A stretch of DNA of 64,000 nt, from the IMG/VR virus record IMGVR_UViG_3300020471_000004, positions 124,001-188,000 of that record; one strand, written 5' to 3'. This document shows, piece after piece, positions 4,538-25,545 of the stretch (the first letter of the stretch is position 1; each line of letters opens with the position of its first letter). A program made the position numbers and the translations under genes. The notes under the pieces were generated by a model, which made no database searches, was not told the origin of the DNA, and worked only from the letters and a program-made list of their open reading frames with translations.

Positions 4538-4622
4538 TATCTTAATTAACTTGGTACAAAACACCAGTATACTAGACCCCTCCCCTTTGCTATAATTGGT
4601 TCATGTTGTGAAGAAGCACAGC
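4538..4622 (+). promoter_or_regulatory. Class-I promoter with leader hairpin
   Basis: GGTACAAAA 4553-4561, 29 nt, TGC-TATAAT 4591-4596, leader ATGTTGTGAAGAAGCACAGC 4603-4622. Confidence 0.8.
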
Positions 4623-4688
4623 GCGCCTTAGCTTGCTAGCTAGGTGAGCCTGCTTTAAACGGCATTCGCTGATTTACGCTTGTTTGCT

Positions 4689-4773
4689 TAACTTTATTAA
4701 GCTGGTACAAAACAACCGTATTCGTAAAACTTACTTTTTGCTATAATAGGTACATGTTGTGAAGAAGCACAGC
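4689..4773 (+). promoter_or_regulatory. Class-I promoter with leader hairpin
   Basis: TAACTTTATTAAG 4689, GGTACAAAA 4704-4712, 29 nt, TATAAT 4742-4747, identical leader 4754-4773. Confidence 0.85.
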
Positions 4774-4811
4774 ACACCTAATTTTTAAACGTCATTATTT
4801 GGAGACTACTT

Positions 4812-5591
4812 ATGACTACTTTCGCTACCGCTAAGAAAATCACCACTGCACAAGTTAACGCTGTTGAAAAATTTGCCGCAAAAGCAATTGACGCAACTAC
4901 CAAAACACAAGAACGTAAGGTTCAACTTGGTAAGCGCATTAGCGTTGAAGGTAAGCGTTACACAATTGAAGGCCTTCGCCGCACTGGTAAGAATCCTGTT
5001 TTCTTTTTGCAAGCTACCACAAAAGATAAAACAATCATCGAGGTGCCGGTGTCAACTATCGCCGAGTTGGTTACTGCCAAGAAAGCAAATAAGAAAACCA
5101 AGCCTGCTTCTACTAAAAAGCCAGGTGTTAAGAAAACTGGTAGCAGACGTAAAGTGCCTCTTACTTTAGAAATGCAGGTTGAAGAACTAACTGCTCGCGT
5201 TCATTCGCTAGAGAAGTTCATTGTTGAAATGCGCTCTGATTTGTTAAAAGAAGCCGCTAAAGAGTTCGGTAAAGTAGTTGGTGAAAGCACAGCCAAACAA
5301 AAGAAGACCAAGACTAAAACAAAGGAAAAGCCTGCTAGCTCGTTAGTTTCATTCGATCATTTTGTTCTAGTTACCGAGAAGGATCCTAGAGAACGCCCTT
5401 TCAGAAAGCTGTCTGGAGCAACTGCTTTCCATAAAGCTAAGAAAGAGAGTGCCACTGTTTACGGTGTCACCGAGTCAGGTAAGAAAACTAAACTTAAGGT
5501 CTTTGCTACTAAAGATCCTGTTTCTAAGAAAGAAACACGTAGCCGCAAATGGCACTGGGCAACAAAGCGTACTGCTACTAAGTTCGCTTAA
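4812..5591 (+). CDS. Lys-rich hypothetical protein (possible nucleic-acid binder)
   Basis: 259 aa; GGAG RBS; K/T-rich tracts (KKANKKTKPASTKKPGVKK, KQKKTKTKTKEK). Confidence 0.8.
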   Translation: MTTFATAKKITTAQVNAVEKFAAKAIDATTKTQERKVQLGKRISVEGKRYTIEGLRRTGKNPVFFLQATTKDKTIIEVPVSTIAELVTAKKANKKTKPASTKKPGVKKTGSRRKVPLTLEMQVEELTARVHSLEKFIVEMRSDLLKEAAKEFGKVVGESTAKQKKTKTKTKEKPASSLVSFDHFVLVTEKDPRERPFRKLSGATAFHKAKKESATVYGVTESGKKTKLKVFATKDPVSKKETRSRKWHWATKRTATKFA

Positions 5592-5615
5592 TTGAAAAAG
5601 CTTATTCGTAGTAAG

Positions 5616-5645
5616 GAGACTGCACCGAGGTGCAGTCTTGTTTAT
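5616..5645 (+). terminator. Intrinsic terminator
   Basis: AGACTGCAC-CGAG-GTGCAGTCT followed by TGTTTAT. Confidence 0.65.
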
Positions 5646-5669
5646 CTTAAATAATTAACCGAGGTTTTT

Positions 5670-5864
5670 ATGGAAAAGTTTACACCACCTTTCGCAGAAA
5701 TGTTTCAGCGTGATATGAAACTACATGCCGAGAAATTGCTAAAGGAATACGGCACTAATTCTGTCGGTGTTCAATGTTGCACAAAGGTATCTGAAACAAA
5801 AGGTATGCTAGAAGTCTATTACTTTATAAAAGACGAAGACAATACCGAAGACGGTACTGAATAG
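5670..5864 (+). CDS. Small hypothetical protein
   Basis: 64 aa; GAGG RBS. Confidence 0.65.
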   Translation: MEKFTPPFAEMFQRDMKLHAEKLLKEYGTNSVGVQCCTKVSETKGMLEVYYFIKDEDNTEDGTE

Positions 5865-5865
5865 C

Positions 5866-5950
5866 TATCTTTAATACGTTGGTACAAAACAGTGGTGCTT
5901 GCCACCGCTGCTTTTTGTTATAATAGCTACATGTTGTGAAGAAGCACAGC
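5866..5950 (+). promoter_or_regulatory. Class-I promoter with leader hairpin
   Basis: GGTACAAAA 5881-5889, 29 nt, TGT-TATAAT 5919-5924, leader 5931-5950. Confidence 0.85.
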
Positions 5951-5982
5951 ACAATTTTTGACATTATTTGAGGAACCTATTT

Positions 5983-6651
5983 ATGTCACGTATTAACAAA
6001 AAACTTGCTCAGCACATTGTTCACCTTCAAAACGAAAGCGTACCACACTTGGTAGACCTTATTCTACGCAAGCAGGCGAAATCGCCTAGCCTGCCTAAGC
6101 ACTTTGATAAGAGTGTTGATTACTACAAAGGTTGCCTAGATTCTCTTTACACCCAGATTGAATCTTTGTTGTTTATGCATAACGTGTATTACGGTTACAG
6201 AGAGTCAGTAGTGAGAGGCGTTTCTATTCGCCGCTATGTTTTCCCTGATGAATGTACCAACGTGGTGTCTGTCTCAGAGCTTAAAAGAAAGTGTACTGAG
6301 AAGTACATTAGCTCTAGCCTAATCGAAGCAGAGAGAAGTGCTAAAGAGTATCAGCCTGAGCATAACCTAGATTACACTATCTATCAAGCTGAGGAAGCTA
6401 TACCAACGACTTGTCGTCCGTATATCCGACTTAAAACAAAAAGCGGTAGCTATGCTTACCTGATGACCAAAACTAAGACAGTTACTAAAGCACTCCTTGA
6501 AGGTGCTGAGCTTAACTTTGTTGCATATACTCCTGACGGTGTTGCGGTATATGATTTACAAAACCAACACGCTTTTCATAACGTTATTACTGCAGGTGAC
6601 GAGTTTGAAAATTACTTTATTCTTCACCGCCCTGATGAAGTACCAGCATAA
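5983..6651 (+). CDS. Hypothetical protein
   Basis: GAGGA RBS before ATG 5983 (the track starts at TTG 5968). Confidence 0.7.
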   Translation: MSRINKKLAQHIVHLQNESVPHLVDLILRKQAKSPSLPKHFDKSVDYYKGCLDSLYTQIESLLFMHNVYYGYRESVVRGVSIRRYVFPDECTNVVSVSELKRKCTEKYISSSLIEAERSAKEYQPEHNLDYTIYQAEEAIPTTCRPYIRLKTKSGSYAYLMTKTKTVTKALLEGAELNFVAYTPDGVAVYDLQNQHAFHNVITAGDEFENYFILHRPDEVPA

Positions 6652-6661
6652 GGAAAAAAAA

Positions 6662-7090
6662 ATGAAAGCTGTATCTGCATTACGCGCATTAAGAAAGGCG
6701 CAAAAATCTTTGGCTTCAACTGAAGAGCGAATTAAAGAACTACAGGCAGAGCTAGACTCTGCCTATGAAGACAAACAGACGTTTTCAGACGCTACACATA
6801 CTCTAACTAAGTTGCTAGTAGAAGCTAGAGCCAAAGAAGACCCAGAAGGTTTCTATTTGTTCATTAAGGGTATGTGTACTAATAGTTGTCGCCGTATGCC
6901 TTATTCTAAAGAAGTAAAGTCTCTAGATAGGGCCTTAAAGCAAGGTGTACCAGAAGACTGTTACGAGGCCCGTCTAGTTGTTGTATTCAACAAGAAGGGC
7001 AAACGTGATAAAGTTATTGCTAAACAAAACATCAATCAGTGGGATATAACCCCTGCAGGTAAAAAGACAATTAAGGAACTGTCGCTATGA
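6662..7090 (+). CDS. Hypothetical protein with N-terminal coiled coil
   Basis: AAGGA RBS before ATG 6662; heptad-like ALRKAQKSLASTEERIKELQAEL. Confidence 0.7.
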   Translation: MKAVSALRALRKAQKSLASTEERIKELQAELDSAYEDKQTFSDATHTLTKLLVEARAKEDPEGFYLFIKGMCTNSCRRMPYSKEVKSLDRALKQGVPEDCYEARLVVVFNKKGKRDKVIAKQNINQWDITPAGKKTIKELSL

Positions 7091-7689
7091 TAAATATTAA
7101 GAATGTAAATGTAGAAGCTGTTTTCCACGAAAAGTACGGAAACTCGCCTGAGATTAAAATAGAGGTTAAGGAAGAAGGTAAAGCAAACCCTTTTATGTGC
7201 TTTGAGCATGGAGGTAAAGACTTTCTCCTTTCACTAACTAACGGTGTCGGTAAATACGGTATCTACGGTAACTCGAAAGAAAGAGAACTTTTTCAAAGAA
7301 GAGGTACCTACACGGTGCTTGTCTTAGATAAAGACGAAAAGACTGTGGTAGAACGCAAGTATCGAACTTGGTCAAGTTCTCGCCCTTCTATTATGAACGA
7401 GGTATTCGCTCTTGAAGGAGATAATTACCTAACAGACTGCGAGGTACGACTTGAATGTAACAGGTCACCTGTAGGTAACGCCACAGTAGGTTTACTTAAA
7501 CAGTTGAAAGACCAAGTAGAAGGCTTTTTTATTCTTGCTTGCTTAGACCTAGAGGATTTTGACGATTACGGAGAAAAAGTAATTCGTTACTTCCCTAGTT
7601 TACAGGCAGACCGCTTTGACTTCGGTCCTGAATGTGAATGGAAAGCAAAGCGGTTCAGCAAAGATTACCAAATCTTGGAAACACTGTAA
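7087..7689 (+). CDS. Hypothetical protein
   Basis: 200 aa; ATGA overlap with the upstream stop. Confidence 0.7.
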   Translation: MINIKNVNVEAVFHEKYGNSPEIKIEVKEEGKANPFMCFEHGGKDFLLSLTNGVGKYGIYGNSKERELFQRRGTYTVLVLDKDEKTVVERKYRTWSSSRPSIMNEVFALEGDNYLTDCEVRLECNRSPVGNATVGLLKQLKDQVEGFFILACLDLEDFDDYGEKVIRYFPSLQADRFDFGPECEWKAKRFSKDYQILETL

Positions 7690-7700
7690 ACACAATAAAT

Positions 7701-7720
7701 AGCGGGGCATTGCCCCCGCT
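7701..7720 (+). terminator. GC-rich hairpin
   Basis: AGCGGGG-CATTGC-CCCCGCT in the intergenic gap; weak U-tract. Confidence 0.45.
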
Positions 7721-7738
7721 GTATACGTAGAGAAAATT

Positions 7739-7900
7739 ATGCTTACTCTGGACGATTTTATTAGCGACTACCAGCACTTGGTTGTCCGTAATATGAATAA
7801 AGATGGTCAGCTTCTTAAAAACCAAGCTTTAGCTCACGTAGAGAAATACTACACTCACTGTAAAGCAGAGTGTTTAGATTTTCTAAACAGAAAAAGTTAA
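7739..7900 (+). CDS. Small hypothetical protein, 53 aa (not in ORF track)
   Basis: ATG 7739 to TAA 7900, MLTLDDFISDYQHLVVRN..., fills the gap; GAGA upstream. Confidence 0.5.
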   Translation: MLTLDDFISDYQHLVVRNMNKDGQLLKNQALAHVEKYYTHCKAECLDFLNRKS

Positions 7901-7933
7901 CCCCTCGGCATTATTTATCAAAGGAGATTACTT

Positions 7934-8296
7934 ATGCCACGCGCAATCGAAGTAGAACACAAACGTTGGACCCAGACTTCTGTATTGATCGATACAGGTG
8001 AGTACAGTTACATATACGGTTACTACCAAGGTAACGCCGTTAAAACTATAGGTATGCGGTGGAACGGTAAAGGTCAAGACGCAGGTTACCCTAAGCTATT
8101 TAAGCGACCTGTATGGTTTAATATTCCACAAGAGCTTACTTTGCCTACTTTACTTATGCTTAGTTCTCACCTAGCTTTAACTTATGCAGGTCCTGTTCTT
8201 TCAAAGAACGGCACGATGACAAAAGCAGAGTTTGACGAGTACACCATCAACATCAAATCAGCTATCGCTAACTGTAGAGAAGGAAACCTACTATGA
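7934..8296 (+). CDS. Hypothetical protein
   Basis: 120 aa; AAGGAG RBS; aromatic motif IGMRWNG...GYP...VWF. Confidence 0.75.
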   Translation: MPRAIEVEHKRWTQTSVLIDTGEYSYIYGYYQGNAVKTIGMRWNGKGQDAGYPKLFKRPVWFNIPQELTLPTLLMLSSHLALTYAGPVLSKNGTMTKAEFDEYTINIKSAIANCREGNLL

Positions 8297-9060
8297 AAAC
8301 TTGTAACTTCCATATAGCGTGGGTCGGAAAGTGTAAGGCAAAAGTAGTTGAAGGTACTGACTATTGCGAAGACCATACTGTTGGTTGTGAAGTATGTGGT
8401 GCGCAGGCTACTGACTCTTGTGACCATACAGGTTCACTGGTTTGCGGAGCACCTTTGTGTGGTTCAGTTCTTTGTAAGTACAAGCACAGGTTCACCAAGC
8501 ACTGTAGTTCAGGTAGCTTTAACTTAGCAACTTTGCCTTACCTTATTTTTGATTTTTGCCAAGGTACTGCTCAGACTAGCGTTAGTTCTATGAAGCAGGT
8601 AACGAGTGCTATGCGTACAACACTCCGAAATGAACAAAAGTTTTATAACCAATACATGCCTGAAAAGGCAAAAGAAAGAGCTTTTTCTTACACTCGATGG
8701 GCTGCAACTATTGACCTGCTAGAGACTTTGTTGGACAAGTGCATAGACTTTCAACTTAATACAGGTTTTGCGTTTGCCGACGAGATAGATAACATGACGG
8801 TGAAAATATATCGGGTCTGTATTACTGATCCTGCTCGAAATAAAGCACACGTTTTCTTTATACGACCTTGGTTAGAAAGCAGCGCATTCACTTTCTTAAA
8901 GGGTTTACCTTCTGTAACACACTTGGAAATAGATGCAGATGAACAGGCATGCATTAAGTTTTTCAAAGAGGGTATGTTTGTCCAAAACGCTTTCCCTACA
9001 CTAGCGCCTGAGGTTCGGGAGTATTTAATCACAGGTCTTTTGCCAGAGGAGCAAGCGTGA
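8293..9060 (+). CDS. Hypothetical protein with Cys/His-rich N-terminal (Zn-binding) domain
   Basis: CNFH..C..YCEDH..CEVC..CDH..CGAPLC..LC..HRF..HC in the first 75 aa. Confidence 0.75.
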   Translation: MKTCNFHIAWVGKCKAKVVEGTDYCEDHTVGCEVCGAQATDSCDHTGSLVCGAPLCGSVLCKYKHRFTKHCSSGSFNLATLPYLIFDFCQGTAQTSVSSMKQVTSAMRTTLRNEQKFYNQYMPEKAKERAFSYTRWAATIDLLETLLDKCIDFQLNTGFAFADEIDNMTVKIYRVCITDPARNKAHVFFIRPWLESSAFTFLKGLPSVTHLEIDADEQACIKFFKEGMFVQNAFPTLAPEVREYLITGLLPEEQA

Positions 9061-9269
9061 TGCCTATGCTAGTTAAATTTTCAGTAGCGATAGTTATGCT
9101 GGTTTCTTTTGGTCTACTCCCTTTATTGTGGACATTGCTAATAGACCTTGGCGTTAACCAAGCTATTTGCTTTATGTTGGTATCTGCACTTCCTTTTATT
9201 ATTGCAAAGATAGCAGAGAACGTTCTACTAAAACTAGGCTACCTTTCTAAGCGTAACCCTATTAAGTAA
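9057..9269 (+). CDS. Small two-TM membrane protein
   Basis: 70 aa; two hydrophobic segments; GTGA overlap. Confidence 0.65.
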   Translation: MMPMLVKFSVAIVMLVSFGLLPLLWTLLIDLGVNQAICFMLVSALPFIIAKIAENVLLKLGYLSKRNPIK

Positions 9270-9432
9270 TGCGGTGACGCTTGATACTCCTGGGCGTTAA
9301 AGGGATGTTCGGTAGGTAAGGGTTTATTTCTTTCCCGATTAGCTTAACCGATCTACCAAGGGGAGCCACTTCTGTCGAATCGGTTTGTTCCTTTCCACTG
9401 TGGCGAAAATAAGGAACACCTAGAAGCGCATT
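9268..9432 (+). ncRNA. Putative multi-stem non-coding RNA
   Basis: Closing stem AATGCG/CGCATT; internal stems GGTAG/CTACC, CTTCT/AGAAG and TGTTCCTT/AAGGAACA; no ORF. Confidence 0.35.
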
Positions 9433-9448
9433 TAACCAAGTGTGTTTT

Positions 9449-9507
9449 TAGGTACACTAAATAGGTACAAAATAACTATATTCCCTGTATGGGTATTTTG
9501 CTATAAT
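9449..9507 (+). promoter_or_regulatory. Class-I promoter
   Basis: GGTACAAAA 9464-9472, 29 nt, TGC-TATAAT 9502-9507. Confidence 0.75.
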
Positions 9508-9537
9508 AAGCATATTGAACGAACTGAGGAAAAGCAC

Positions 9538-9867
9538 ATGTTGCATACCGGTAATACTTACACTTTAAAACACTTATTCAATCTAGACCTGACAGACGTA
9601 CCTAGTCTGTCGGTAATAGTTGAAGGTAACGAGTCTCCTATTCAACACAGCCATATGACTGTTTCGGATTTTTTAGATCAACCTGAATGGGCAGAGACTA
9701 AATGGGTTTTCTTATTCACTACGCATGAGGAGATTCCTTGTTTCGTAGCTTCGAATAGCCAAGAGGTTCTTAAATTGGTTACAGTTGAAGAACCTGTAGA
9801 CAGGTATCTTGATTACTGGATAGTGCCTAAATCGCACCCTAGAGAACAGTACGGTGTTTCAAAATGA
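9538..9867 (+). CDS. Hypothetical protein
   Basis: GAGGA RBS before ATG 9538 (the track start 9442 overlaps the promoter). Confidence 0.7.
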   Translation: MLHTGNTYTLKHLFNLDLTDVPSLSVIVEGNESPIQHSHMTVSDFLDQPEWAETKWVFLFTTHEEIPCFVASNSQEVLKLVTVEEPVDRYLDYWIVPKSHPREQYGVSK

Positions 9868-9956
9868 AACACCATAAGTTTTTAGCTGGAATATCTCTTA
9901 TAATAATAGCTGGTATCATTCTTTACTTAACCAGCGTTTACTACTATTACATTTAA
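9864..9956 (+). CDS. 30-aa single-TM peptide (not in ORF track)
   Basis: MKHHKFLAGISLIIIAGIILYLTSVYYYYI; ATGA overlap with the upstream stop. Confidence 0.5.
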   Translation: MKHHKFLAGISLIIIAGIILYLTSVYYYYI

Positions 9957-9966
9957 GGAAACACCG

Positions 9967-10305
9967 ATGACTGATATTAAAATCTCAAAATCTATTCTGG
10001 TTGAATTGACCGAAATTGCCGCTTTTCATGCCAAGTATCTGCACATGTCTAAAACAAACTTTGAAGGTCAAGGTATTGATTCAGACGTGGCTGAAATGCT
10101 TGTAAGAGACCAACGCACTGTAATTGATACAAGCGTAGGTGCTCTTATCCGCGTTCATGCTTATAGCCATGTTTTAGAAAACGTAACAGCAGGTGACTAC
10201 TCAGACCACCCTGCAAAGTATGACAACCAGGTTCATGCTATTGCTGCCGAACTACGCGCACAGTACAAAACATGTTTAGATAAACTACTTGAGGAGAGCA
10301 AATAA
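9967..10305 (+). CDS. Hypothetical protein
   Basis: 112 aa; AAGGA RBS; TAATG overlap with the next gene. Confidence 0.7.
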   Translation: MTDIKISKSILVELTEIAAFHAKYLHMSKTNFEGQGIDSDVAEMLVRDQRTVIDTSVGALIRVHAYSHVLENVTAGDYSDHPAKYDNQVHAIAAELRAQYKTCLDKLLEESK

Positions 10306-13118: not shown

Positions 13119-13124
13119 AGTTTC

Positions 13125-13186
13125 GCCTGCTTCACCGTTTTAAAACCTCTCCCCTTGTCATCGGTGGTGTGAAGCAGGCTTTTTTA
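13125..13186 (+). terminator. Intrinsic terminator with large loop
   Basis: GCCTGCTTCAC (13125-13135)/GTGAAGCAGGC (13169-13179) followed by TTTTTT. Confidence 0.7.
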
Positions 13187-13188
13187 TT

Positions 13189-15322: not shown

Positions 15323-15323
15323 A

Positions 15324-16869: not shown

Positions 16870-16878
16870 GGAATTACC

Positions 16879-17556: not shown

Positions 17557-17614
17557 CTTTATTAAGTCGGTACAAAACAGCCTTCTAGTTTACCGACTTC
17601 CTATATAGTATAAT
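17554..17614 (+). promoter_or_regulatory. Class-I promoter (31-nt spacer, no TGn)
   Basis: TAACTTTATTAAGTCGGTACAAAA 17554-17577; TATAAT 17609-17614. Confidence 0.65.
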
Positions 17615-17646
17615 GCACATGAAGTCAACAAGTTTATGGAGTATTT

Positions 17647-18156
17647 ATGCCACGTAAAGTAACTAAAACCATGCGCGAAGCCCGCAAACGCGCAGTACAG
17701 CAAAAGCGGGAACGCAGAGAGTACCAAGCTAGCCTAAACAAAGATTGGCATTGGTCATTAGGAGATTCAGATTCAGATACTCGTAGGGTGTTACATGCCG
17801 CAAAGAAACGCGGACCTAAACTAAGTTCTAGCATTCAAATGAAACCTACCAAAGGTAGACCTACGAAACTCGATTCTGTTTTTCTTGATACAGACTTTAG
17901 TGACCTAGAAAAATCTGTTCTAAAGTCTGAATCGAAAAACTTGAATGGTGCAACAACAGGTAAGTTTTCAACCAAAGCATTATCGCGTTCTAATATTCCG
18001 AAGACCATGAGTGAAGAAGAATACCAAAAGCGAGAAGAGGCAGCTCGTCAAGAAATTGAACGCAAGAAAACTTGTATTGCTCCTGCTTACAACAAAGGTG
18101 CCTACCAGTATATTGCAAGTGAGGAAATGGCAAAAGATGCAGGTAAAAAGAAATGA
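17647..18156 (+). CDS. Basic hypothetical protein
   Basis: 169 aa; GGAG RBS; K/R-rich N-terminus; C-terminal CIAPAYNKGAYQYI. Confidence 0.75.
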   Translation: MPRKVTKTMREARKRAVQQKRERREYQASLNKDWHWSLGDSDSDTRRVLHAAKKRGPKLSSSIQMKPTKGRPTKLDSVFLDTDFSDLEKSVLKSESKNLNGATTGKFSTKALSRSNIPKTMSEEEYQKREEAARQEIERKKTCIAPAYNKGAYQYIASEEMAKDAGKKK

Positions 18157-18611
18157 AGACATTCGTTAAAGGTCTTATTAAGTACAAGTACCCTATATGC
18201 CTATCAGTTGTACAAGTATCATTTTTGATATTCATTTATGAGCCTGTAGTAATTGCACTGAAAGAATATTTAGGTGAGCCTTTTTGGTTAGCCTATGTTA
18301 TAACTTTTATGGTCTACATTAACATACTAATACCGTCTTTCTATTGGATATACCGATGCGTTAGAGTTGAATTGTGGAAAAGCAAGAACAAAGTTAACTA
18401 CCACAGGTCTATGGAGAAATTGGCTTTTGATAAATGTCCTTGTTGCTTCGGTTCTCTAGAGGTAAACTTTTCTAATGTCGGTCACGTTACTCAAGCATGT
18501 AGGGGTTGCGGGTTCTGCAATCAAATGGTTGCCAGTATACCAACATTTTTGGACAATAAGCCTTCAGGCAATTACATAAAATGGTCTCAATACATACAAG
18601 AGGCTGAATAA
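18153..18611 (+). CDS. Two-TM membrane protein with C-terminal Zn ribbon
   Basis: Two hydrophobic helices followed by CPCC...CRGCGFC. Confidence 0.7.
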   Translation: MKTFVKGLIKYKYPICLSVVQVSFLIFIYEPVVIALKEYLGEPFWLAYVITFMVYINILIPSFYWIYRCVRVELWKSKNKVNYHRSMEKLAFDKCPCCFGSLEVNFSNVGHVTQACRGCGFCNQMVASIPTFLDNKPSGNYIKWSQYIQEAE

Positions 18612-18620
18612 GGAAATAAC

Positions 18621-19436: not shown

Positions 19437-19441
19437 ATTTT

Positions 19442-19819
19442 ATGCCAGTAACTAAACCTGTTGTAGACACCAAGGCTCCTATTGATACAGATGCCTTTTT
19501 AAAACTTACCCTTAGGGACATAACTCTATCAATTATGGAAAACATTGATTCGCTTTCTAGCAGCGACTACGCAGGACGCATGTTATTGGCTTCTTCGGGA
19601 ATGAGTAAAGACAGTCCTTTGGATTTGCTTATCCAGGCTTTGACAAAAGAGTACTCTACTTACGAAGATATTGCTCGTAAAGTGCTTTCTTTTGACAAAG
19701 CTGAATCTTATAAATTTGTAAAAAGATGGTACACTACTATTTTAAATGTTCATAAAGACGAGTGGGAGGTGATGTACTCGCATACTTATTCTCATGTAAC
19801 TATTGTTTTAGGAAGTTAA
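19442..19819 (+). CDS. Hypothetical protein
   Basis: 125-aa ORF in operon. Confidence 0.65.
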   Translation: MPVTKPVVDTKAPIDTDAFLKLTLRDITLSIMENIDSLSSSDYAGRMLLASSGMSKDSPLDLLIQALTKEYSTYEDIARKVLSFDKAESYKFVKRWYTTILNVHKDEWEVMYSHTYSHVTIVLGS

Positions 19820-19846
19820 AATTAGACACTGACAAGGGGAACAAAA

Positions 19847-20344
19847 ATGTCTAACAAACAAATGAAAGTTTTAGAAGTAGCAAACCTTTTACGTTCACTT
19901 TATACCTCAGGTAAAAAGCCGCACCAGATAGCTTACCTGATTCTTTTGCATTACAAGAAAGACCTTAGTGTAGATGAATTCACGTACTTTATGGACGGGT
20001 TCTATACACCGAACGGTAAACCTCTTGATCGTACTAATGTATACGGCCACTTGTATGCACTAGACAAAGCCAACTATATCTACAAGCAAAAAATGCTTGG
20101 TGATTACGGTAAACCTTGTAACGTGTATTTTATTACACCTAAAGGACTGGATGTTATTCAGCCTATCCTTGACATGTGCGGTGATTGGGACACAGTTAAG
20201 AAGTCGAGCACTTTAACAGCTTTGTTTGGTACGCGACCTTCACCTGAGTACAAACCTATTTCTGAGGCGCTTCAACCAGAAAATAAGTCACTTACATCGG
20301 ATCAAGAGTCTGATTCAAAAACACTACAAAAGGAGACACACTAA
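19847..20344 (+). CDS. Winged-helix (PadR/MarR-like) DNA-binding protein
   Basis: RTNVYGHLYALDKANYI...KPCNVYFITPKG resembles the PadR recognition helix and wing (lY..L..L...G.I......Y.iT..G). Confidence 0.6.
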   Translation: MSNKQMKVLEVANLLRSLYTSGKKPHQIAYLILLHYKKDLSVDEFTYFMDGFYTPNGKPLDRTNVYGHLYALDKANYIYKQKMLGDYGKPCNVYFITPKGLDVIQPILDMCGDWDTVKKSSTLTALFGTRPSPEYKPISEALQPENKSLTSDQESDSKTLQKETH

Positions 20345-20375
20345 TTTAATTGGGATGACACATACGGTGAATCCT

Positions 20376-21155
20376 ATGCGAAAAATAATATTGCTGGCTG
20401 CACTGGTATCGCTTGTTGCCGGTGCCCAGCAAGACAAAGAAATTCTAATAAGCATACCGGAGGACTTTTCATTTCCTCTAGGGCAACAAGTATTGAACGA
20501 TCTTGCAAAACAGGTATACTCAGGTATACCTGTCCGCGTTTCTACTGAATATTTTCCTGACAGGCAATCTGCCTTACTAATAAAGCAAGGCAAGGTCCAC
20601 GGAGAGATATACACATCTAAAGAATTTTACGACTCTTCTGGCATCGAATATATCTCTGAACCTATAACCACTATTCGTATGGCGATGTTTTGTCTAGATA
20701 GGAACGAGTGTGCTTTTCCAGACAAAAACTTTATTTGGATTATTCCAAAAGGCTCTGGCGTAGCAAGTAGCTATTGCCTTGAGAATAAAATATTTTGCGT
20801 TAGCGTAGATAACTCTACCAGTGCTTTTGTAGAGTTACTTAGAAACTCAGGCAGCATTTTGCTAATGGACAAACTTAGCGCCGGAGGGGTTATATGCAAC
20901 TCAGAAATCGATAAGATATATTACCGAGACGTACCTGAATTAGACTCGCTTGCTTTTGTTTCTATAGGCGAAGGTATGTCAGAATATGTTACGGAACTTG
21001 AGACAAATATAAAAAAGCTTAAACGTGATGGAACTATAGATGCTGCGATACAGAGATTCTGGCAAGCTTTGTATGATTGCAACATTTCACCTATTAATGT
21101 AGATGATAGATTTCTACAGTTGACAGAAGGACTAGTTGATGTGGGCACCCAATAA
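20376..21155 (+). CDS. Secreted type-2 periplasmic solute-binding-like protein
   Basis: Signal peptide MRKIILLAALVSLVAGA; family-3-like segments FPDRQSALLIKQGKVHG and NIKKLKRDGTIDAAIQRF; alternative start ATG 20355. Confidence 0.6.
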   Translation: MRKIILLAALVSLVAGAQQDKEILISIPEDFSFPLGQQVLNDLAKQVYSGIPVRVSTEYFPDRQSALLIKQGKVHGEIYTSKEFYDSSGIEYISEPITTIRMAMFCLDRNECAFPDKNFIWIIPKGSGVASSYCLENKIFCVSVDNSTSAFVELLRNSGSILLMDKLSAGGVICNSEIDKIYYRDVPELDSLAFVSIGEGMSEYVTELETNIKKLKRDGTIDAAIQRFWQALYDCNISPINVDDRFLQLTEGLVDVGTQ

Positions 21156-21564
21156 ATATTATTTAGCGCTTCCTAAAGGTTTACCTAATGAACCTGATAA
21201 CTGGGTAAGCGTTAAGTATACCGAACTTGGACATTTTTATAAAGCAGGAAACACGCACACCTATTATCCAGAAGACTTTGAACAGGTTCTTACTTTGGAT
21301 TTTTACCGTGCGGTCACCTTGTGTAAGCACTACAAAGAAGTATACCAGCAGAAGAAAAGAGACCCTAATTCTGTAGAAGAGATTCTTAAAATTCTTACTG
21401 CCTTGAAAGATGACAGGGAAGGCAATACGTCTATTGCTGACTCTGACCAAAATCAAATGATTCTTAAAATATTCCGATTACTTGATAAGGTAGAGAAAGA
21501 TGATCGAGAGCAAATATCCTCTTGTGACTTTGGGCACAATATTAAAACACAACAAGAACAATAG
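21136..21564 (+). CDS. Hypothetical protein
   Basis: 142-aa ORF overlapping its neighbours. Confidence 0.6.
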   Translation: MMWAPNKYYLALPKGLPNEPDNWVSVKYTELGHFYKAGNTHTYYPEDFEQVLTLDFYRAVTLCKHYKEVYQQKKRDPNSVEEILKILTALKDDREGNTSIADSDQNQMILKIFRLLDKVEKDDREQISSCDFGHNIKTQQEQ

Positions 21565-22096
21565 TCCTTATTTGTTTACTATTGTTAGCGAAGACTACAT
21601 TAGTTTTCCTGCGACTTGTTTTTGGACAATCTGCGGTTTAGATGCCCAAGGTCACCCTGATTACAAGTACAAGGTCTTGCGCCCTAATACCCAGACTTGT
21701 TTTGAGCATGACGTGCCTGATGATGTTGATACTTGCTCTAATTGCGCGTTCTTGATAAAAGACTTGTATACTCATGACCTAGCACTTTTGGTTTTACCTA
21801 AAGACTACGCTGACCAGCTTCTTTTTACACAAGACGTTTATTATTCAGCTTCGGTAGCTATGGATAAAGAGTTACCTATTCATTGTAGTTTGAGGTTTAC
21901 ACCTTACGAGACTACCGAGTACTCTGGATTTACTTATGAGGTGCCTTTGAAATTCAGCACAAGCGGTATAAGTATAAAGAAATTTTTAAACCGGCATTTG
22001 CCTTTATGTAGTGCATCTTTCTATAAAAAGAATATGCTTGAGCATAGAGCAGATCACAACTTACTTTCTTTTACTGAGAGTATACGTGTTAGCTAA
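21500..22096 (+). CDS. Hypothetical protein
   Basis: 198-aa ORF; Cys/His cluster CFEH...CSNC. Confidence 0.65.
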   Translation: MIESKYPLVTLGTILKHNKNNSPYLFTIVSEDYISFPATCFWTICGLDAQGHPDYKYKVLRPNTQTCFEHDVPDDVDTCSNCAFLIKDLYTHDLALLVLPKDYADQLLFTQDVYYSASVAMDKELPIHCSLRFTPYETTEYSGFTYEVPLKFSTSGISIKKFLNRHLPLCSASFYKKNMLEHRADHNLLSFTESIRVS

Positions 22097-22106
22097 AACT
22101 GTAAAC
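22095..22106 (+). promoter_or_regulatory. Class-II motif AAAACTGTAAAC
   Basis: Exact 12-mer overlapping the upstream stop; recurs at 30625, 31241 and 53479. Confidence 0.55.
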
Positions 22107-22195
22107 TAAAGTAACAAAGCACACAAGCTAAGGATTTGTGCTTCAAATCAACGTATGTATAATGGAATTTGTTGTACGCCAAATAGAGAACTAAT

Positions 22196-22744
22196 ATGTT
22201 ATCAACCTATTCTTTAATAGTGGAAAACCAGGACTTGTTTTCTGCTCAAATTGCACAGGAAGTTTTTGGAGACGTAATAGCAGGTAACAATCCTAATCAA
22301 GTTATAGTAATTACTGATACCTCGCTGCGGAGGAAAGAGCTTACTTCAAACGCGTTTACTTGTTTAGGCGGCTTTGGTTTATTCGCGTCTTTCTTGGATC
22401 TAGACAGGTCTTTTCTAGAGAAAGACGCCGCTAGACCTGCTTTGGTTGCTTGCGCAAACCATGTAGCTAGCGGGTATGACTTTATTAAAGCAGGGCTAAC
22501 AAATTTTTATTTTATAGCTCCTCCTAGATGGACTACTTTGTATGAGCAAAGTAAGCTTGAAGCACACCTTGTGTCCAAGAACTCTATGTTATTGCATTTA
22601 ATGAGCAAGCTTGACCGACCGAGTGTTTTCGATTTTGAAGATATTTCTTTAACAATCGTCTGCAAGGACAAGCGAGTGTACGATATTGTAAAGAAGTGGG
22701 TAGACGATAAAAAGTATATACTATCTTCTAAAGGAGAATTATGA
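22196..22744 (+). CDS. Hypothetical protein
   Basis: 182-aa ORF; ATGA overlap with uvsE. Confidence 0.7.
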   Translation: MLSTYSLIVENQDLFSAQIAQEVFGDVIAGNNPNQVIVITDTSLRRKELTSNAFTCLGGFGLFASFLDLDRSFLEKDAARPALVACANHVASGYDFIKAGLTNFYFIAPPRWTTLYEQSKLEAHLVSKNSMLLHLMSKLDRPSVFDFEDISLTIVCKDKRVYDIVKKWVDDKKYILSSKGEL

Positions 22745-23757
22745 AAATAGGATTTGCATGTAAGTACTTTCATCCTGACCGAACTTTGCCTGCCAAAGCT
22801 CTCAAAGAGGAAGAACAAAAATACAACTTTAAATCTACTACTGCAAAATGGTTAAAGGATAACCCTAAACTTGCCTACAAGCGGTTAGAAGAAATTTGTA
22901 TCTACAACGCCGAATGTGTGGTTCGTTTAGTAGACCTGGTTAGTAGCTGGGCCGTGCCGCTAAGAATGTTACGCATAGGGAGCGATGTACTCCCTATGTA
23001 TACCCACAAAGATTTCAGAACTTTCTACAAAAAAGCCCCCTTTATGCAAGAAGTGGAAAACTTACTTGCAGCCGCAGGTCATCGTGCGAGAGCTGCAGGC
23101 GTCAAACTCTCAATGCACCCTGGTCAATTTTGTGTACTTGCTTCTACCAAGCCTGATGTGATTGCCAATTCAATAGAAGAATTCGAGTACCACGTAGACG
23201 TTATCCGAATGATGGGCTACGCCAAGTCTAAACTTGATTTCAAGTGCAATGTCCATCTTTCAGGTGCAGGTGGTGCCGACAAATTCCTATCTACTTACCA
23301 AAAGCTTTCAACCGAAGCCCGCCGCGTTATCACTTTAGAGAATGACGAGTACACCTCCGACCTAAACGACCTGCTGCCTCTAGCAGACTATGTAGGTATC
23401 GTGCTTGATATTCACCACTACTGGATATACAACCATTCTTTTATCTCCTCACAAGACCCTAGACTTGAAATAATAGAGCAATCTTGGCAAGGCAGGCGTC
23501 CCACTATTCATTACTCGTACAGCCGAGAAGAGCATTTAAAAGGTCTTACTGGCACAAAGCCTGACCTGAATGCTCTTGTATATTCAGGCATCCCTAAGTC
23601 TAAACTAAGAGCACATTCTGATAGTTATCCTAATCCTGCAATGAATAGGTATGCACTGGAGTTTCTGCCTCAATTTGATATTATGTGCGAAGCCAAGAAC
23701 AAGAATGAAGCAAGCACACTCCTATACAAGCAGGCGGTACGCGTAGGTGTACTCTAA
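22741..23757 (+). CDS. uvsE: UV damage endonuclease (UvsE/UVDE)
   Basis: MKIGFAC, RMLRIGSD, LSMHPGQF, EFEYH, ITLENDE, VLDIHH, AHSD and DIMCEAKNK motifs. Confidence 0.92.
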   Translation: MKIGFACKYFHPDRTLPAKALKEEEQKYNFKSTTAKWLKDNPKLAYKRLEEICIYNAECVVRLVDLVSSWAVPLRMLRIGSDVLPMYTHKDFRTFYKKAPFMQEVENLLAAAGHRARAAGVKLSMHPGQFCVLASTKPDVIANSIEEFEYHVDVIRMMGYAKSKLDFKCNVHLSGAGGADKFLSTYQKLSTEARRVITLENDEYTSDLNDLLPLADYVGIVLDIHHYWIYNHSFISSQDPRLEIIEQSWQGRRPTIHYSYSREEHLKGLTGTKPDLNALVYSGIPKSKLRAHSDSYPNPAMNRYALEFLPQFDIMCEAKNKNEASTLLYKQAVRVGVL

Positions 23758-23839
23758 CTGTATTAAGTCGGTACAAAACAGTATATGTTAATACTCGCTT
23801 AATTTGTTATACTTATTAAATGTTGCGAAGAAGCGCAGC
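23755..23839 (+). promoter_or_regulatory. Class-I promoter with covariant leader hairpin
   Basis: GGTACAAAA 23770-23778, 29 nt, TGT-TATACT 23808-23813, leader ATGTTGCGAAGAAGCGCAGC 23820-23839. Confidence 0.85.
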
Positions 23840-23861
23840 ATATTATTTAGGAGCATTTATT

Positions 23862-24173
23862 ATGGCTAAGCAAGTTTCAGAAAAAACCATGAAGTTTATC
23901 GCACAACGTTTGCGTGATGTAGCAGATACTAAACCTAACTTTAACTCTGAGTTGGTTGATCCTGAAAAGGATTTCGAAAAGTACCAAGACCTGGCTTTGC
24001 TGATTATCGAACCTGATATTCACGCAGAAGGGCCTGACTTCGATTCTAAAACCAATGAGTTTTACATGGACTGGCTACAGAACGATACAGACAACTGGGC
24101 GCAGTATATAAATAACCTGCTCGGTGCAGAGTGGGGAAGAATAGCCAAGTTCGTTTCAACCCACGGTTACTAA
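23862..24173 (+). CDS. Small acidic protein, paralog of 25096-25428
   Basis: AGGAG RBS; shares YxxLAxxIxEP...NxTDNWA...GY C-terminus. Confidence 0.8.
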   Translation: MAKQVSEKTMKFIAQRLRDVADTKPNFNSELVDPEKDFEKYQDLALLIIEPDIHAEGPDFDSKTNEFYMDWLQNDTDNWAQYINNLLGAEWGRIAKFVSTHGY

Positions 24174-24186
24174 ATAGGGGGTTAAC

Positions 24187-24369
24187 ATGAATTCAGAGAT
24201 TCAAGCCCGCAATATATCTAGCCTGTACTACCAGTTGGTTGATCGGCTTTCAGAATTAGAAAGCACAGGCGACAGCAACCATATTGACCTCAGTATTGTA
24301 ACCCAGTTAAAAAACAAAATGGAAAAGCTTGAACCTATAGTTACCCAAGCTAAAGAATCAATAAAATAA
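24187..24369 (+). CDS. Small hypothetical protein
   Basis: 60 aa; AGGGGG RBS. Confidence 0.6.
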   Translation: MNSEIQARNISSLYYQLVDRLSELESTGDSNHIDLSIVTQLKNKMEKLEPIVTQAKESIK

Positions 24370-24380
24370 AAGGAATTAAA

Positions 24381-24473
24381 GTGCGCTTATTAAAAAAGAT
24401 ACTTAAAAGTACTACATTTAATTTACTGGTCGTTATTGTTGTCGTCCTTTATTATCATACCTGTCTTGTGTAG
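24381..24473 (+). CDS. 30-aa single-TM peptide (not in ORF track)
   Basis: GTG start after AAGGA; MRLLKKILKSTTFNLLVVIVVVLYYHTCLV. Confidence 0.45.
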   Translation: MRLLKKILKSTTFNLLVVIVVVLYYHTCLV

Positions 24474-24594
24474 TAGGTTTTGAAAATACTAATATAATGT
24501 ATAGGGAGCAAGTCTGCTCCTGTTAAAATAACCCAAAGGATTCGCTTCACTATTCCTTTCTAGATACACCTAAAAAACAAGTTGGAAATAAAAT

Positions 24595-24999
24595 ATGGTT
24601 TATATTATTAAACCTATAGGCAGTCTTTACGTTTCCTTACGTGACTTTTTGTCCAAAGCAAATGCGATAAAGAACCTTGATAAAAAGCTGGATGCTTTAA
24701 GAGTAGAGTTTGAAACCAACGGTCGAAGTCGAGAATGGTTCAAAGCTGTCCGTTCTATAGTGCTTGACGTTGCTCGTCACAGAAAAGCTCTTGAGCCTTA
24801 TACGACCTCAACGCTTGCTACCTTAATAAAGATAGTTGGCCCTAACACCGTGCTTAATACGTTGGTAGACGGCAGGTATTTGAATAGACAGGTAGCAGAT
24901 AACCTTCTGTCTGAATATAACGAAACATCTTACATGGTAGACAAGAAAGTAAAGGACTTGCGCCTAGCTAAGTGTATCAAGGGTAACTTTACTAAATAG
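24595..24999 (+). CDS. Hypothetical protein
   Basis: 134-aa ORF. Confidence 0.65.
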   Translation: MVYIIKPIGSLYVSLRDFLSKANAIKNLDKKLDALRVEFETNGRSREWFKAVRSIVLDVARHRKALEPYTTSTLATLIKIVGPNTVLNTLVDGRYLNRQVADNLLSEYNETSYMVDKKVKDLRLAKCIKGNFTK

Positions 25000-25042
25000 G
25001 TACAAAATAGACCATTACGCAGAACACAAATTTTGCTATAAT
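24984..25042 (+). promoter_or_regulatory. Class-I promoter
   Basis: TAACTTTACTAAATAGGTACAAAA 24984-25007, 29 nt, TGC-TATAAT 25037-25042; degenerate leader TTGTTGTCGCAGCAAAGCGCAGC. Confidence 0.8.
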
Positions 25043-25095
25043 GTAATTGTTGTCGCAGCAAAGCGCAGCAATCAAACAAACTTTCGGAGATACAA

Positions 25096-25428
25096 ATGGA
25101 CGATATTACTTTAGACGGTCACTCAGCAATTGTTAATGCTATTCTTTCAAGTTGTTCGAGAGAACTTTCTGTTAGCTACGATGACCCAAGCCTTGAAACA
25201 TCGGTTAGCGGCGCCCTTGAAAAGGCGAAACAGGATGACTACGAAGATTATAGCCAACTTGCCCAAGTTATAGTTGAACCAACGTTTACTGAAAACCAAT
25301 CAGTTATCCAAGAAGAATATGCCGAGTATATCGAGAACAATACTGATAACTGGGCAGCCTGGGTACGCCAAACTTTTGGTAACGCTTTAGGTAATCTTGC
25401 CGATGCCGTAAACGAATACGGTTATTAA
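25096..25428 (+). CDS. Small acidic protein, paralog of 23862-24173
   Basis: GGAG RBS; DYEDYSQLAQVIVEP...ENNTDNWAAW...EYGY. Confidence 0.8.
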   Translation: MDDITLDGHSAIVNAILSSCSRELSVSYDDPSLETSVSGALEKAKQDDYEDYSQLAQVIVEPTFTENQSVIQEEYAEYIENNTDNWAAWVRQTFGNALGNLADAVNEYGY

Positions 25429-25438
25429 GTTATAAGCT

Positions 25439-25462
25439 AGTAGGCTTCTGTAGGAGTCTACT
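25439..25462 (+). terminator. Hairpin (possible terminator)
   Basis: AGTAGGCTTC/GGAGTCTACT stem with G-U pairs. Confidence 0.4.
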
Positions 25463-25468
25463 GACGTA

Positions 25469-25545
25469 TAACTTTACTAAAGTGGTACAAAACACCATAT
25501 ATACGTACCCCTGTAGTTTTGCTATACTGTATGCATGTTGTGACA
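25469..25545 (+). promoter_or_regulatory. Class-I promoter with ATGTTGTGA leader
   Basis: GGTACAAAA 25484-25492, 30 nt, TGC-TATACT 25523-25528, ATGTTGTGA at 25535. Confidence 0.8.

What the first reader, a model, noticed from the sequence alone, without database searches (positions are those of the whole stretch)
4603..25545. Shared 5' leader hairpin at +1 with compensatory base changes
Seen in sequence: ATGTTG begins after an exact 6-nt gap downstream of the -10 box in five promoters. Three carry identical ATGTTGTGAAGAAGCACAGC (4603, 4754, 5931). At 23820 it is ATGTTGCGAAGAAGCGCAGC, where TGTG/CACA becomes TGCG/CGCA, a paired change preserving the GUUGYG/CRCAGC stem around an AAGAAG loop. 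Degenerate versions occur at 25047 and 25535. Inference: this is a 5'-terminal stabilising hairpin, or a protein-binding tag (boxB-like antitermination or RNase protection) marking a class of phage mRNAs.
Basis: partly seen in the sequence, partly recalled or inferred. Interest (0 to 1): 0.65.

Follow-up and report, generated by a model that had tools for sequence, protein, structure and literature searches.

The report
Hairpin-capped early mRNAs of marine jumbo phage
A family of strong phage promoters in this marine jumbo-phage genome makes messenger RNAs that begin directly with a short hairpin. The same arrangement, with unrelated stem sequences, recurs in distant relatives, so the hairpin is a real, selected RNA feature that most likely shields the RNA's 5' end from decay.

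Summary
The exact 20-mer ATGTTGTGAAGAAGCACAGC occurs at 4603, 4754 and 5931. A copy with one compensated base pair (U-A to C-G) occurs at 23820, and looser hairpins at 25049 and 25535. Each starts 7-8 nt after the -10 box of one promoter class: A/T-rich tract, GGTACAAAA, about 28 nt, TGyTATAAT. The window holds 10 such promoters, all on the + strand, and six carry the hairpin.

The genome is a 233-kb marine jumbo phage of the Lu11/PaBG/NCTB/Alexandravirus group. Orthologous promoters in phage NCTB, two other marine lineages, Dickeya phage AD1, Erwinia phages and a Yersinia phage also start their transcripts with a hairpin at +1 to +5. Their stems and loops differ. G·U pairs make the sense strand fold better than the antisense strand. 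So the selected object is a 5'-terminal RNA stem-loop, not a DNA operator or a copy-number accident.

The most likely function is protection of the triphosphate 5' end from RppH/RNase E-type decay. This is inferred, not shown. Within this lineage the stem and loop sequence is also conserved, so a binding factor or an initial-transcribed-sequence effect is not excluded. A boxB/nut-like antitermination site is not supported. This is a new member of a known kind, of moderate interest.

The parts
4553..4596 (+). Class promoter P4553: GGTACAAAA box (4553-4561), 28-nt spacer, extended -10 TGCTATAAT (-10 at 4591-4596). Predicted start is A4603. It is the upstream member of a tandem pair.
   Evidence: The KOPF relative has a single promoter here.
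4603..4622 (+). Leader hairpin copy 1: AUGUUGUGAAGAAGCACAGC, paired 4605-4622, loop AAGAAG.
   Evidence: -6.9 kcal/mol. In a longer context an alternative fold competes.
4704..4747 (+). Class promoter P4704, -10 at 4742-4747, predicted start A4754. It drives the 259-aa ORF 4812-5591.
   Evidence: An RNA contig of run X15 begins at 4756-4759.
4754..4774 (+). Leader hairpin copy 2: paired 4755-4774, 7 bp, loop AAGAAG.
   Evidence: -7.6 kcal/mol. The NCTB ortholog has UGUUGU-CGAGA-ACAACA instead.
5881..5924 (+). Class promoter P5881, -10 at 5919-5924, predicted start A5931. It drives the ORF 5965-6651. A terminator-like hairpin (5890-5910) lies inside its spacer.
5931..5951 (+). Leader hairpin copy 3: paired 5932-5951.
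   Evidence: -7.6 kcal/mol.
23770..23813 (+). Class promoter P23770, -10 TATACT at 23808-23813, predicted start A23820. It drives the ORF 23862-24173.
23820..23841 (+). Leader hairpin with the compensated pair: AUGUUGCG-AAGAAG-CGCAGCAU, 8 bp, paired from +1.
   Evidence: -10.3 kcal/mol, z -2.8. Identical in the KOPF relative. The NCTB ortholog has AAGUUGAGC..GCACAGCUU.
24999..25042 (+). Class promoter P24999, -10 at 25037-25042, predicted start G25049. It drives the ORF 25096-25428.
25049..25069 (+). Leader hairpin GUUG(U)CGC-AGCAAA-GCGCAGC, 7 bp with one bulge, paired from +1.
   Evidence: -8.4 kcal/mol.
25484..25528 (+). Class promoter P25484, -10 TATACT at 25523-25528, predicted start A25535. 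It drives the 614-aa ORF 25595-27439.
25535..25553 (+). Leader hairpin AUGUUGU-GACAG-ACAGCAU, 7 bp, paired from +1.
   Evidence: -6.6 kcal/mol. The orthologous leader carries a different 5' hairpin in KOPF (a 2-nt indel gives 8 bp), NCTB, the TARA clade, AD1, other Alexandravirus, Rivsvirus and a Yersinia phage.
2772..2815 (+). Class promoter without a stable 5' hairpin (box GGTACAATA, start A2822, leader AUUGUC...). It drives the ORF 2852-4021.
9464..9507 (+). Class promoter without a hairpin (start A9514, leader about 24 nt).
17569..17614 (+). Class promoter without a hairpin (start G17621). It drives the ORF 17647-18156.
36983..37027 (+). Class promoter without a hairpin (start near 37034). 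It drives the topoisomerase II subunit gene 37065-38672.

Best explanation
These are 5'-terminal stem-loops of phage mRNAs made from one class of strong sigma-70-type promoters. The promoters have an extended -10 box, an upstream GGTACAAAA box and an A/T-rich tract, and no -35 box. They are probably the early or middle promoters of the DNA-metabolism region of a marine jumbo phage. Transcription starts 7 nt after the -10 box, and the first 19-22 nt of the RNA fold into a 7-8 bp hairpin that leaves 0-2 unpaired 5' nucleotides. This most likely hides the triphosphate 5' end from the host's 5'-end-dependent decay route (RppH pyrophosphate removal, then RNase E 5'-sensor entry). That would lengthen the life of these phage messages.

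Shown: the repeats, the promoter geometry, the folds, and conservation of the hairpin's position with changing sequence across relatives. Inferred: the exact start site, the temporal class and the stabilising function.
For: Geometry:
- All six hairpins begin 7-8 nt after a TATAAT/TATACT box preceded by TG.

Structure rather than sequence is conserved between lineages:
- For the leader of the 614-aa gene, the window has AUGUUGU/ACAGCAU. KOPF has AUGUUGUG/CGCAGCAU through a 2-nt indel. NCTB has AUGUUGGGGC/GCUCUAGCAU. The TARA clade has GCUG-GAAA-CAGC. AD1 has GACGCA-AUAG-UGCGUC. The Yersinia phage has GUGUUG/CAACAC. Rivsvirus has GUUGAGCA-AUAG-UGCUCAAC.
- In Dickeya phage AD1, 7 of 7 class promoters have a hairpin starting at +1 to +5. 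In Erwinia phage Y3 it is 3 of 3.

Enrichment over chance:
- 13 of 31 distinct leaders have a terminal hairpin of -4 kcal/mol or better, against 11% of random positions (P about 1e-5). 11 of 31 reach -6 kcal/mol, against 3.9%.
- Shuffling only the 3' part of the leaders gives P 0.0015 for the window and 0.003 for NCTB.

RNA rather than DNA:
- There are 13 G·U pairs. The sense strand folds better than the antisense strand in 13 of 20 hairpins, with a mean difference of -2.1 kcal/mol (P 0.005).

Transcription in nature:
- Marine metatranscriptome contigs lie on the region. One begins 2-5 nt after the predicted start at 4754.

Established knowledge:
- RppH and RNase E need single-stranded 5' ends, which explains the stabilising effect of 5' secondary structures (PMC3997798, citing Emory 1992, Bouvet and Belasco 1992, Arnold 1998).
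- A 5' hairpin stabilises T4 gene 32 mRNA (PMC8948821).
Against: - No half-life data and no mapped 5' ends exist. The start is inferred from the -10 box.
- Four of 10 class promoters in the window, and about half in NCTB, lack the hairpin, so it is not obligatory for the class.
- Within the window/KOPF lineage the whole 20-mer, including the loop AAGAAG, is identical at several paralogous sites while the flanks have diverged. A purely structural role does not require that.
- The 5' arm motif GUUG recurs across lineages, which hints at a sequence-specific constraint.
- A second RNA contig runs across promoter P5881, so read-through transcripts without a terminal hairpin also exist, or DNA contaminates the library.
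- In E. coli RppH governs only about 10% of mRNAs (PMC3997798).
Confidence: 0.5

Rival explanations
1. The hairpin is a recognition tag on the nascent or mature RNA for a trans-acting protein, phage-encoded or host. The protein could be a processive antiterminator, a translational regulator, or a protective or timing factor that acts only on this subset of early messages.
For: - The stem and the loop AAGAAG are perfectly conserved at four paralogous sites and in the KOPF relative, while the promoter spacer and downstream leader diverge.
- The outer pairs GUUG/CAGC are shared by all six window hairpins, and a GUUG(AG) 5' arm recurs in NCTB, AD1, Rivsvirus and the Yersinia phage.
- Only a subset of class promoters carries it, as expected for a regulatory tag.
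Against: - Loops differ in length (3-10 nt) and sequence between sites in one genome and between lineages.
- AD1 has seven different hairpins.
- No boxA-like element lies on the + strand near any leader.
- There is no Rfam family match.
- No candidate RNA-binding protein was identified. Neighbouring ORFs have no Pfam or PHROG function.
Confidence: 0.22
2. The conserved letters reflect a constraint at the DNA or initiation level. One option is an initial transcribed sequence tuned for escape from a very strong promoter. The other is an operator centred near +11 for a repressor that shuts the class off. In either case the RNA fold is secondary.
For: - The element spans +1 to +21, the region known to affect promoter escape and the position of operators such as lac O1 (own knowledge).
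- The 5' arm A(U)GUUG is the best conserved part. Hairpin-less class promoters also start AUUG (2822, 9514).
Against: - The spacing between the two half-sites varies from 12 to 18 nt among sites in the same genome. The half-sites are unrelated among AD1's seven sites.
- Complementarity is kept through changes on the 3' arm alone, through indels and through G·U pairs. G·U pairs are mismatches in DNA and on the other strand.
- An escape-tuned sequence would not need an inverted repeat.
Confidence: 0.13
3. The element is a leaderless mini-ORF (AUG UUG UGA) at the 5' end, or a promoter-proximal attenuator made of the hairpin plus a U-run.
For: - AUG lies at +1 in five of six window hairpin leaders. 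In four of them UGA follows two codons later.
- At 5932-5951 the generic scan calls the hairpin plus CAATTTTTGA terminator-like.
Against: - AUG at +1 is absent from all TARA-clade, AD1 and Y3 leaders.
- The 23820 variant loses the stop codon.
- The AUG is buried in the stem.
- The U-run is 4-9 nt away from the stem, and it is absent at 23820, 25049 and 25535.
Confidence: 0.04

Closest known systems
5'-terminal stem-loop mRNA stabilisers of E. coli (ompA hp1, papA leader)
   Same: A short hairpin with at most a few unpaired nucleotides at the extreme 5' end. The effect depends on pairing rather than sequence and acts against RppH/RNase E 5'-end-dependent decay (PMC3997798).
   Different: Those are single cellular genes shown by half-life experiments. 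Here the hairpin is wired to a whole phage promoter class, nothing has been measured, and within one lineage the sequence as well as the fold is conserved.
Phage 5' leader stabilisers: the T4 gene 32 5' leader hairpin, and the stem-loop at +1 of T7 class III (phi10) transcripts
   Same: These are phage messages whose first nucleotides fold into a hairpin credited with long mRNA life. The T4 case is cited in PMC8948821. The T7 case is from my own knowledge and was not checked here.
   Different: The phage groups, polymerases and sequences are unrelated. T4 uses a CUUCGG-type loop and T7 uses its own RNA polymerase promoter. Here the promoter is sigma-70-like and the loops are purine-rich and variable.
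Lambda nut site (boxA + boxB) and HK022 put RNA
   Same: Promoter-proximal RNA hairpins on early phage transcripts.
   Different: boxB is a 5-bp stem with a fixed GNRA-like pentaloop, paired with boxA and an N protein. put is about 70 nt with two stem-loops. Neither sits at +1. Here the loops vary, no boxA is present and there is no Rfam hit.
Protection of cyanophage and host mRNAs from RNase E by antisense RNA duplexes during marine phage infection
   Same: A marine phage setting in which double-stranded RNA shields messages from RNase E (PMC3113571, abstract seen).
   Different: There the duplex is intermolecular and covers cleavage sites. Here it is an intramolecular hairpin at the 5' end.

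Membership tests
5'-terminal stem-loop mRNA stabiliser | The stem-loop begins within about 0-4 nt of the primary transcript's 5' end. | tested here: met
   Under the start predicted from the -10 box, the first paired base is +1 to +3 in all six window hairpins and +1 to +5 in relatives. The start itself is predicted. The only direct hint is one RNA contig end at 4756-4759.
5'-terminal stem-loop mRNA stabiliser | The function rests on pairing, not on a particular sequence. | tested here: met
   Orthologous leaders keep a hairpin with unrelated stems and loops in at least seven lineages. There is one compensated pair between paralogs and one structure-preserving indel. Caveat: the sequence is also conserved within the window/KOPF lineage.
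5'-terminal stem-loop mRNA stabiliser | The hairpin lengthens mRNA half-life in a way that depends on RppH or the RNase E 5' sensor. | not testable with these tools
   This needs rifampicin-chase half-life assays with stem mutants in wild-type, rppH and rne 5'-sensor backgrounds.
Lambda-type nut site (boxA/boxB) | A boxB hairpin with a 5-bp stem and a conserved GNRA-like pentaloop. | tested here: not met
   Stems are 4-10 bp. Loops are AAGAAG, AGCAAA, GACAG, ACAGA, CGAGA, AAC, GAAA, GAGUUA, AUAG and others.
Lambda-type nut site (boxA/boxB) | A boxA element (CGCTCTTTA-like) next to the hairpin on the same strand. | tested here: not met
   YGCTCTTWA has 6 matches in the window, all on the - strand and at chance frequency. 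None lies near a leader.
Lambda-type nut site (boxA/boxB) | An N-like arginine-rich antiterminator protein is encoded by the phage. | not tested
   Neighbouring ORFs have no Pfam or PHROG assignment. No dedicated search was made.
Intrinsic terminator / attenuator | A G+C-rich hairpin followed at once by a U-tract. | tested here: not met
   Only 5932-5951 is flagged, with the T-run 4 nt away. There is no T-run after the hairpins at 23820, 25049 or 25535.
Palindromic DNA operator | Conserved half-sites at fixed spacing, symmetric on both strands. | tested here: not met
   Half-site spacing is 12-18 nt within one genome. G·U pairs make the antisense strand fold worse (13 of 20, P 0.005). AD1 has seven unrelated inverted repeats.
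Any curated RNA family (Rfam 15) | A match at the gathering threshold. | tested here: not met
   There are 0 matches in the whole 64-kb window.

The most novel reading that the evidence does not exclude
The hairpin is a self-mark. The phage carries a Nudix hydrolase gene (2292-2759) directly upstream of the promoter cluster, and NCTB and KOPF keep one in the same place. If this enzyme acts like RppH and strips 5' pyrophosphate from host mRNAs to speed their RNase E decay, the phage's own early messages, whose 5' ends are base-paired, would be immune. That would be host shut-off with built-in self-protection.
Probability: 0.08. Interest if true: 0.75.

Novelty: new member of a known kind. Interest (0 to 1): 0.45.

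Why it matters
The transcription programme of the Lu11/PaBG/NCTB/Alexandravirus jumbo phages has not been described. I found no paper on their promoters or leaders.

This finding does three things:
- It defines a promoter class: a G(G/T)(G/T)ACAAAA box, an extended -10 box, and no -35 box.
- It shows that across marine, plant-pathogen and Yersinia phages these promoters tend to launch mRNAs that start with a hairpin.
- It gives ready-made natural covariation for testing 5'-end protection in phage infection.

It also offers compact promoter-plus-leader cassettes that could be useful for expression work. If the hairpin turns out to be a protein tag or a self-mark against phage-induced mRNA decay, it would be a new regulatory principle for this group.

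Tried and rejected
- **Collection scans.** Scans of viral contigs with the promoter pattern gave only chance hits, apart from two contigs with a GGTACAAAAC-TATA-type promoter and no hairpin. The pattern with ATGTTG added gave nothing. The one metagenome-contig scan returned only another copy of the same phage (MDTA01078178) plus chance hits.
- **Protein-based locus search.** The search for related loci with two proteins found nothing.
- **Phage collection.** A megablast of 4 kb against the phage collection found nothing.
- **Whole-record search.** The genome search cannot reach ENA contigs, so only 21-kb pieces of the TARA-clade genomes were seen.
- **Reads.** Read laying truncated its table of variant letters, so population variants inside the hairpins could not be read.
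- **Alignment.** A MAFFT alignment of the short hairpins was not structurally meaningful. I therefore ran no count of structure pairs or covariance-model analysis and compared hairpins one by one.
- **Leader length.** Leaders with hairpins have a median length of 54.5 nt, against 32 nt without. The difference equals the hairpin's own length, so it says nothing about ribosome shielding.
- **Phage sigma factor.** Pfam Sigma70 regions 2 and 4 find nothing in this genome, NCTB, AD1 or PaBG. PaBG is reported to have a divergent sigma factor (PMC7412058). Which polymerase holoenzyme uses the class is therefore unsettled.
- **Other relatives.** Lu11 and PaBG showed no copy of the GGAC(A/G)AAA-type promoter pattern.
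- **Readings rejected.** The mini-ORF, attenuator, boxB/nut and DNA-operator readings were considered and rejected for the reasons given under the rival explanations.

Full report
**What is in the sequence**

The pattern ATGTTGYGAAGAAGCRCAGC matches exactly at 4603, 4754 and 5931 (T/A form) and at 23820 (C/G form). Nothing else in the 64-kb window matches with up to three mismatches, against 0.02 expected by chance.

Reading the flanks shows that each copy lies 6 nt after a TATAAT or TATACT hexamer preceded by TG, which makes an extended -10 box. That hexamer lies about 28 nt after the box GGTACAAAA(C/T), which follows an A/T-rich tract (consensus aaCTTTAtTAAg).

A pattern search finds nine such promoters in the window, against 0.03 expected. 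A looser search adds a tenth at 2772. All ten are on the + strand between 2.7 and 37 kb. The whole 232,692-bp genome holds only one more, on the other strand. There is no -35 hexamer, so a generic sigma-70 scan misses these promoters.

With the usual 7-nt distance from the -10 box, the predicted starts are A4603, A4754, A5931, A23820, G25049 and A25535. The RNA folds from these points into hairpins of 7-8 bp, at -6.6 to -10.3 kcal/mol. The first paired base is +1 to +3. The promoters at 2772, 9464, 17569 and 36983 have unstructured leaders.

The change at 23820 converts the pair U7-A16 into C7-G16, so it is a true compensated pair. Among the three identical copies the 20-mer is 100% identical. 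The promoter spacer is only 46-57% identical and the following 20 nt only 30-45%. The identity is therefore selective and not the trace of a recent duplication.

**What genome this is**

The window is part of an IMG/VR virus record that is 93% complete and recurs in marine metagenomes. Its nearest named relative is phage NCTB, LT598654. Weaker protein matches go to Dickeya, Erwinia and Yersinia jumbo phages. A published analysis groups NCTB with Lu11, PaBG, Dickeya AD1/JA and Erwinia Y3/Yoloswag/Alexandra. It also mentions TARA contigs over 200 kb that are close to NCTB (PMC7412058).

The region served by the promoter class encodes a Nudix hydrolase, a UvdE endonuclease, type II topoisomerase subunits and many small proteins of unknown function. 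This looks like an early or middle DNA-metabolism block. The temporal class is an inference.

**Comparative evidence**

NCTB has the same promoter class, with eight copies on one strand between 26 and 61 kb. Its orthologous leaders also start with hairpins, but different ones:
- UGUUGU-CGAGA-ACAACA before the ortholog of the 259-aa gene.
- AAGUUGAGC..GCACAGCUU before the ortholog of the 103-aa gene.
- AUGUUGGGGC-AAC-GCUCUAGCAU before the ortholog of the 614-aa gene.

A closer marine relative is the KOPF scaffold of 250 kb, with 88-94% protein identity. It keeps the window's hairpins letter for letter while the promoter spacers change. In one hairpin it has a 2-nt insertion that turns a 7-bp stem into an 8-bp stem.

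A more distant marine clade consists of TARA, HARO and k141 contigs of about 240 kb, at 38% identity on the 614-aa protein. It uses GGGACAAAA as its box and starts its leaders with ACGCU-GAGUUA-AGCGU, GCUG-GAAA-CAGC and a weak ACUG..CAGU.

The enterobacterial relatives show the same arrangement:
- Dickeya phage AD1 uses TGGAC(A/G)AAA. All seven of its class promoters are followed by a hairpin that begins at +1 to +5, and each hairpin has a different sequence.
- Erwinia phage Y3 shows three of three.
- The leader of the 614-aa gene ortholog carries GACGC(A)..(U)GCGUC in other Alexandravirus genomes, GUGUUG..CAACAC in Yersinia phage fHe-Yen9-02, and GUUGAGCA-AUAG-UGCUCAAC in Rivsvirus SNUABM5.

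The position of the hairpin at the start of the transcript is thus conserved over the whole group, while its letters are not.

**Statistics**

Of 31 distinct leaders, 13 have a terminal hairpin of -4 kcal/mol or better, against 11% of random genome positions (binomial P about 1e-5). Eleven reach -6 kcal/mol, against 3.9%. Some leaders are paralogs or close orthologs, so the effective number is nearer 24 leaders with 9-10 distinct hairpins. That is still far above chance.

Positions 7 nt after other TATAAT-like hexamers show the background rate of about 9%. Keeping the first 6 nt and shuffling the rest gives P 0.0015 for the window and 0.003 for NCTB.

The hairpins contain 13 G·U pairs. The sense strand folds better than the antisense strand in 13 of 20 cases, with a mean difference of -2.1 kcal/mol (Wilcoxon P 0.005). 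This argues for selection on the RNA of the transcribed sense rather than on a DNA palindrome.

**Transcription in nature**

Three marine metatranscriptome runs hold parts of the stretch. Laid on 4000-9900, their contigs match perfectly. One contig begins at 4756-4759, which is 2-5 nt after the predicted start at 4754. Another spans 5826-5989, across promoter P5881. So either read-through transcription from upstream occurs or DNA is present in the library. Contigs cannot prove a 5' end, and I treat this as weak support only.

**Mechanism**

The established facts are these. RppH and the 5' sensor of RNase E need a single-stranded 5' end, and this explains the long-known stabilising effect of 5' secondary structure (PMC3997798, citing Emory 1992, Bouvet and Belasco 1992, Arnold 1998, Bricker 1999). 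A 5' hairpin stabilises T4 gene 32 mRNA (PMC8948821).

The hairpins here leave 0-2 unpaired nucleotides, or up to 4 in some relatives. Their sequence is free to change between lineages. Both points fit that role, so I give it a probability of 0.5.

Two things keep the probability from being higher:
- Within the window/KOPF lineage both stem and loop are identical at paralogous sites whose flanks have diverged.
- The 5' arm G(U/C)UG recurs across lineages.

Either a factor reads the hairpin (0.22), or the first 20 transcribed bases are constrained at the initiation or DNA level (0.13).

Four other readings fare worse:
- **boxB/nut:** it fails on loop conservation and boxA, and Rfam has no match.
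- **Attenuator:** there is no adjacent U-tract.
- **Leaderless mini-ORF AUG-UUG-UGA:** it is not conserved outside the NCTB-like lineages.
- **DNA operator:** the half-site spacing varies and the two strands fold unequally.

**Novelty and verdict**

I found no description of this promoter class or its leaders. The kind of element, a 5'-terminal stabilising stem-loop that is also known from phage messages, is familiar. I therefore file it as a new member of a known kind.

Its added interest is that it is tied to a promoter class and conserved by structure across a widespread jumbo-phage group.

Its structural inference is supported, its stabiliser reading is the best available but untested, and its boxB analogy is not supported.

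Noticed in passing
window 2292-2759 (+): A Nudix hydrolase gene lies directly upstream of the promoter cluster (Pfam NUDIX, E 7e-9). Its nearest solved relatives are DIPP/Ap4A hydrolases, with weak matches to RppH and Dcp2. NCTB and KOPF keep one in the same position. AD1 has one elsewhere in its genome.
   Followed up: partly
window 4553-4811: P4553 and P4704 are tandem class promoters 151 nt apart with identical hairpins. The roughly 100 nt between them has no ORF. The KOPF relative has a single promoter here, whose -10 context matches P4553 (L150:9889).
   Followed up: partly
window 5588-5864: The small ORF 5670-5864 (64 aa) is an indel in natural populations. DNA contigs of runs X6 and X7 join 5587 directly to the next promoter, while the KOPF and L153 relatives keep the gene.
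   Followed up: no
window 25436-25462; L156:9850-9880: A hairpin just upstream of promoter P25484 (CUAGUAGGC..GUCUACUG) is kept in the TARA clade with changed stem letters (CUAGUGGG..CCACUG). It has no U-tract. It may be a 3'-end or processing structure of the upstream gene.
   Followed up: no
window 25555-25570; NCTB 47640-47655; L156:9975-9990: The motif (A)ACUUUCGU is conserved in the leader of the 614-aa gene in four lineages, downstream of the variable hairpin. A related CUUUCGGAG lies in the leader at 25075.
   Followed up: no
window 5890-5910: A terminator-like hairpin (8 bp, followed by CTTTTTG) sits inside the spacer of promoter P5881. The end of the upstream gene's transcript therefore overlaps the next promoter.
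   Followed up: no
promoter boxes in the window, L156, and AD1 (L162-L179): The upstream box changes with lineage: GGTACAAAA in the window, KOPF and NCTB; GGGACAAAA in the TARA clade; TGGAC(A/G)AAA or TGGTCAAAA in AD1, Y3 and Rivsvirus. It keeps its distance to the -10 box. This suggests that a co-evolving factor reads it rather than a plain UP element.
   Followed up: partly
L046:88-131, L046:4777-4820 and L083:12906-12949 (IMG/VR contigs): Unrelated small viral contigs carry repeated promoters of a similar build (cgccagaactgc-GGTACAAAAC-N3-TATA..TGTGTTATAAT, same 44-nt span) but with an A-rich unstructured start.
   Followed up: no
window 33941-35974 and 37065-38672: Type II topoisomerase is encoded as separate GyrB/Toprim-like and ParC/GyrA-like genes, with two small ORFs and a class promoter between them.
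   Followed up: no
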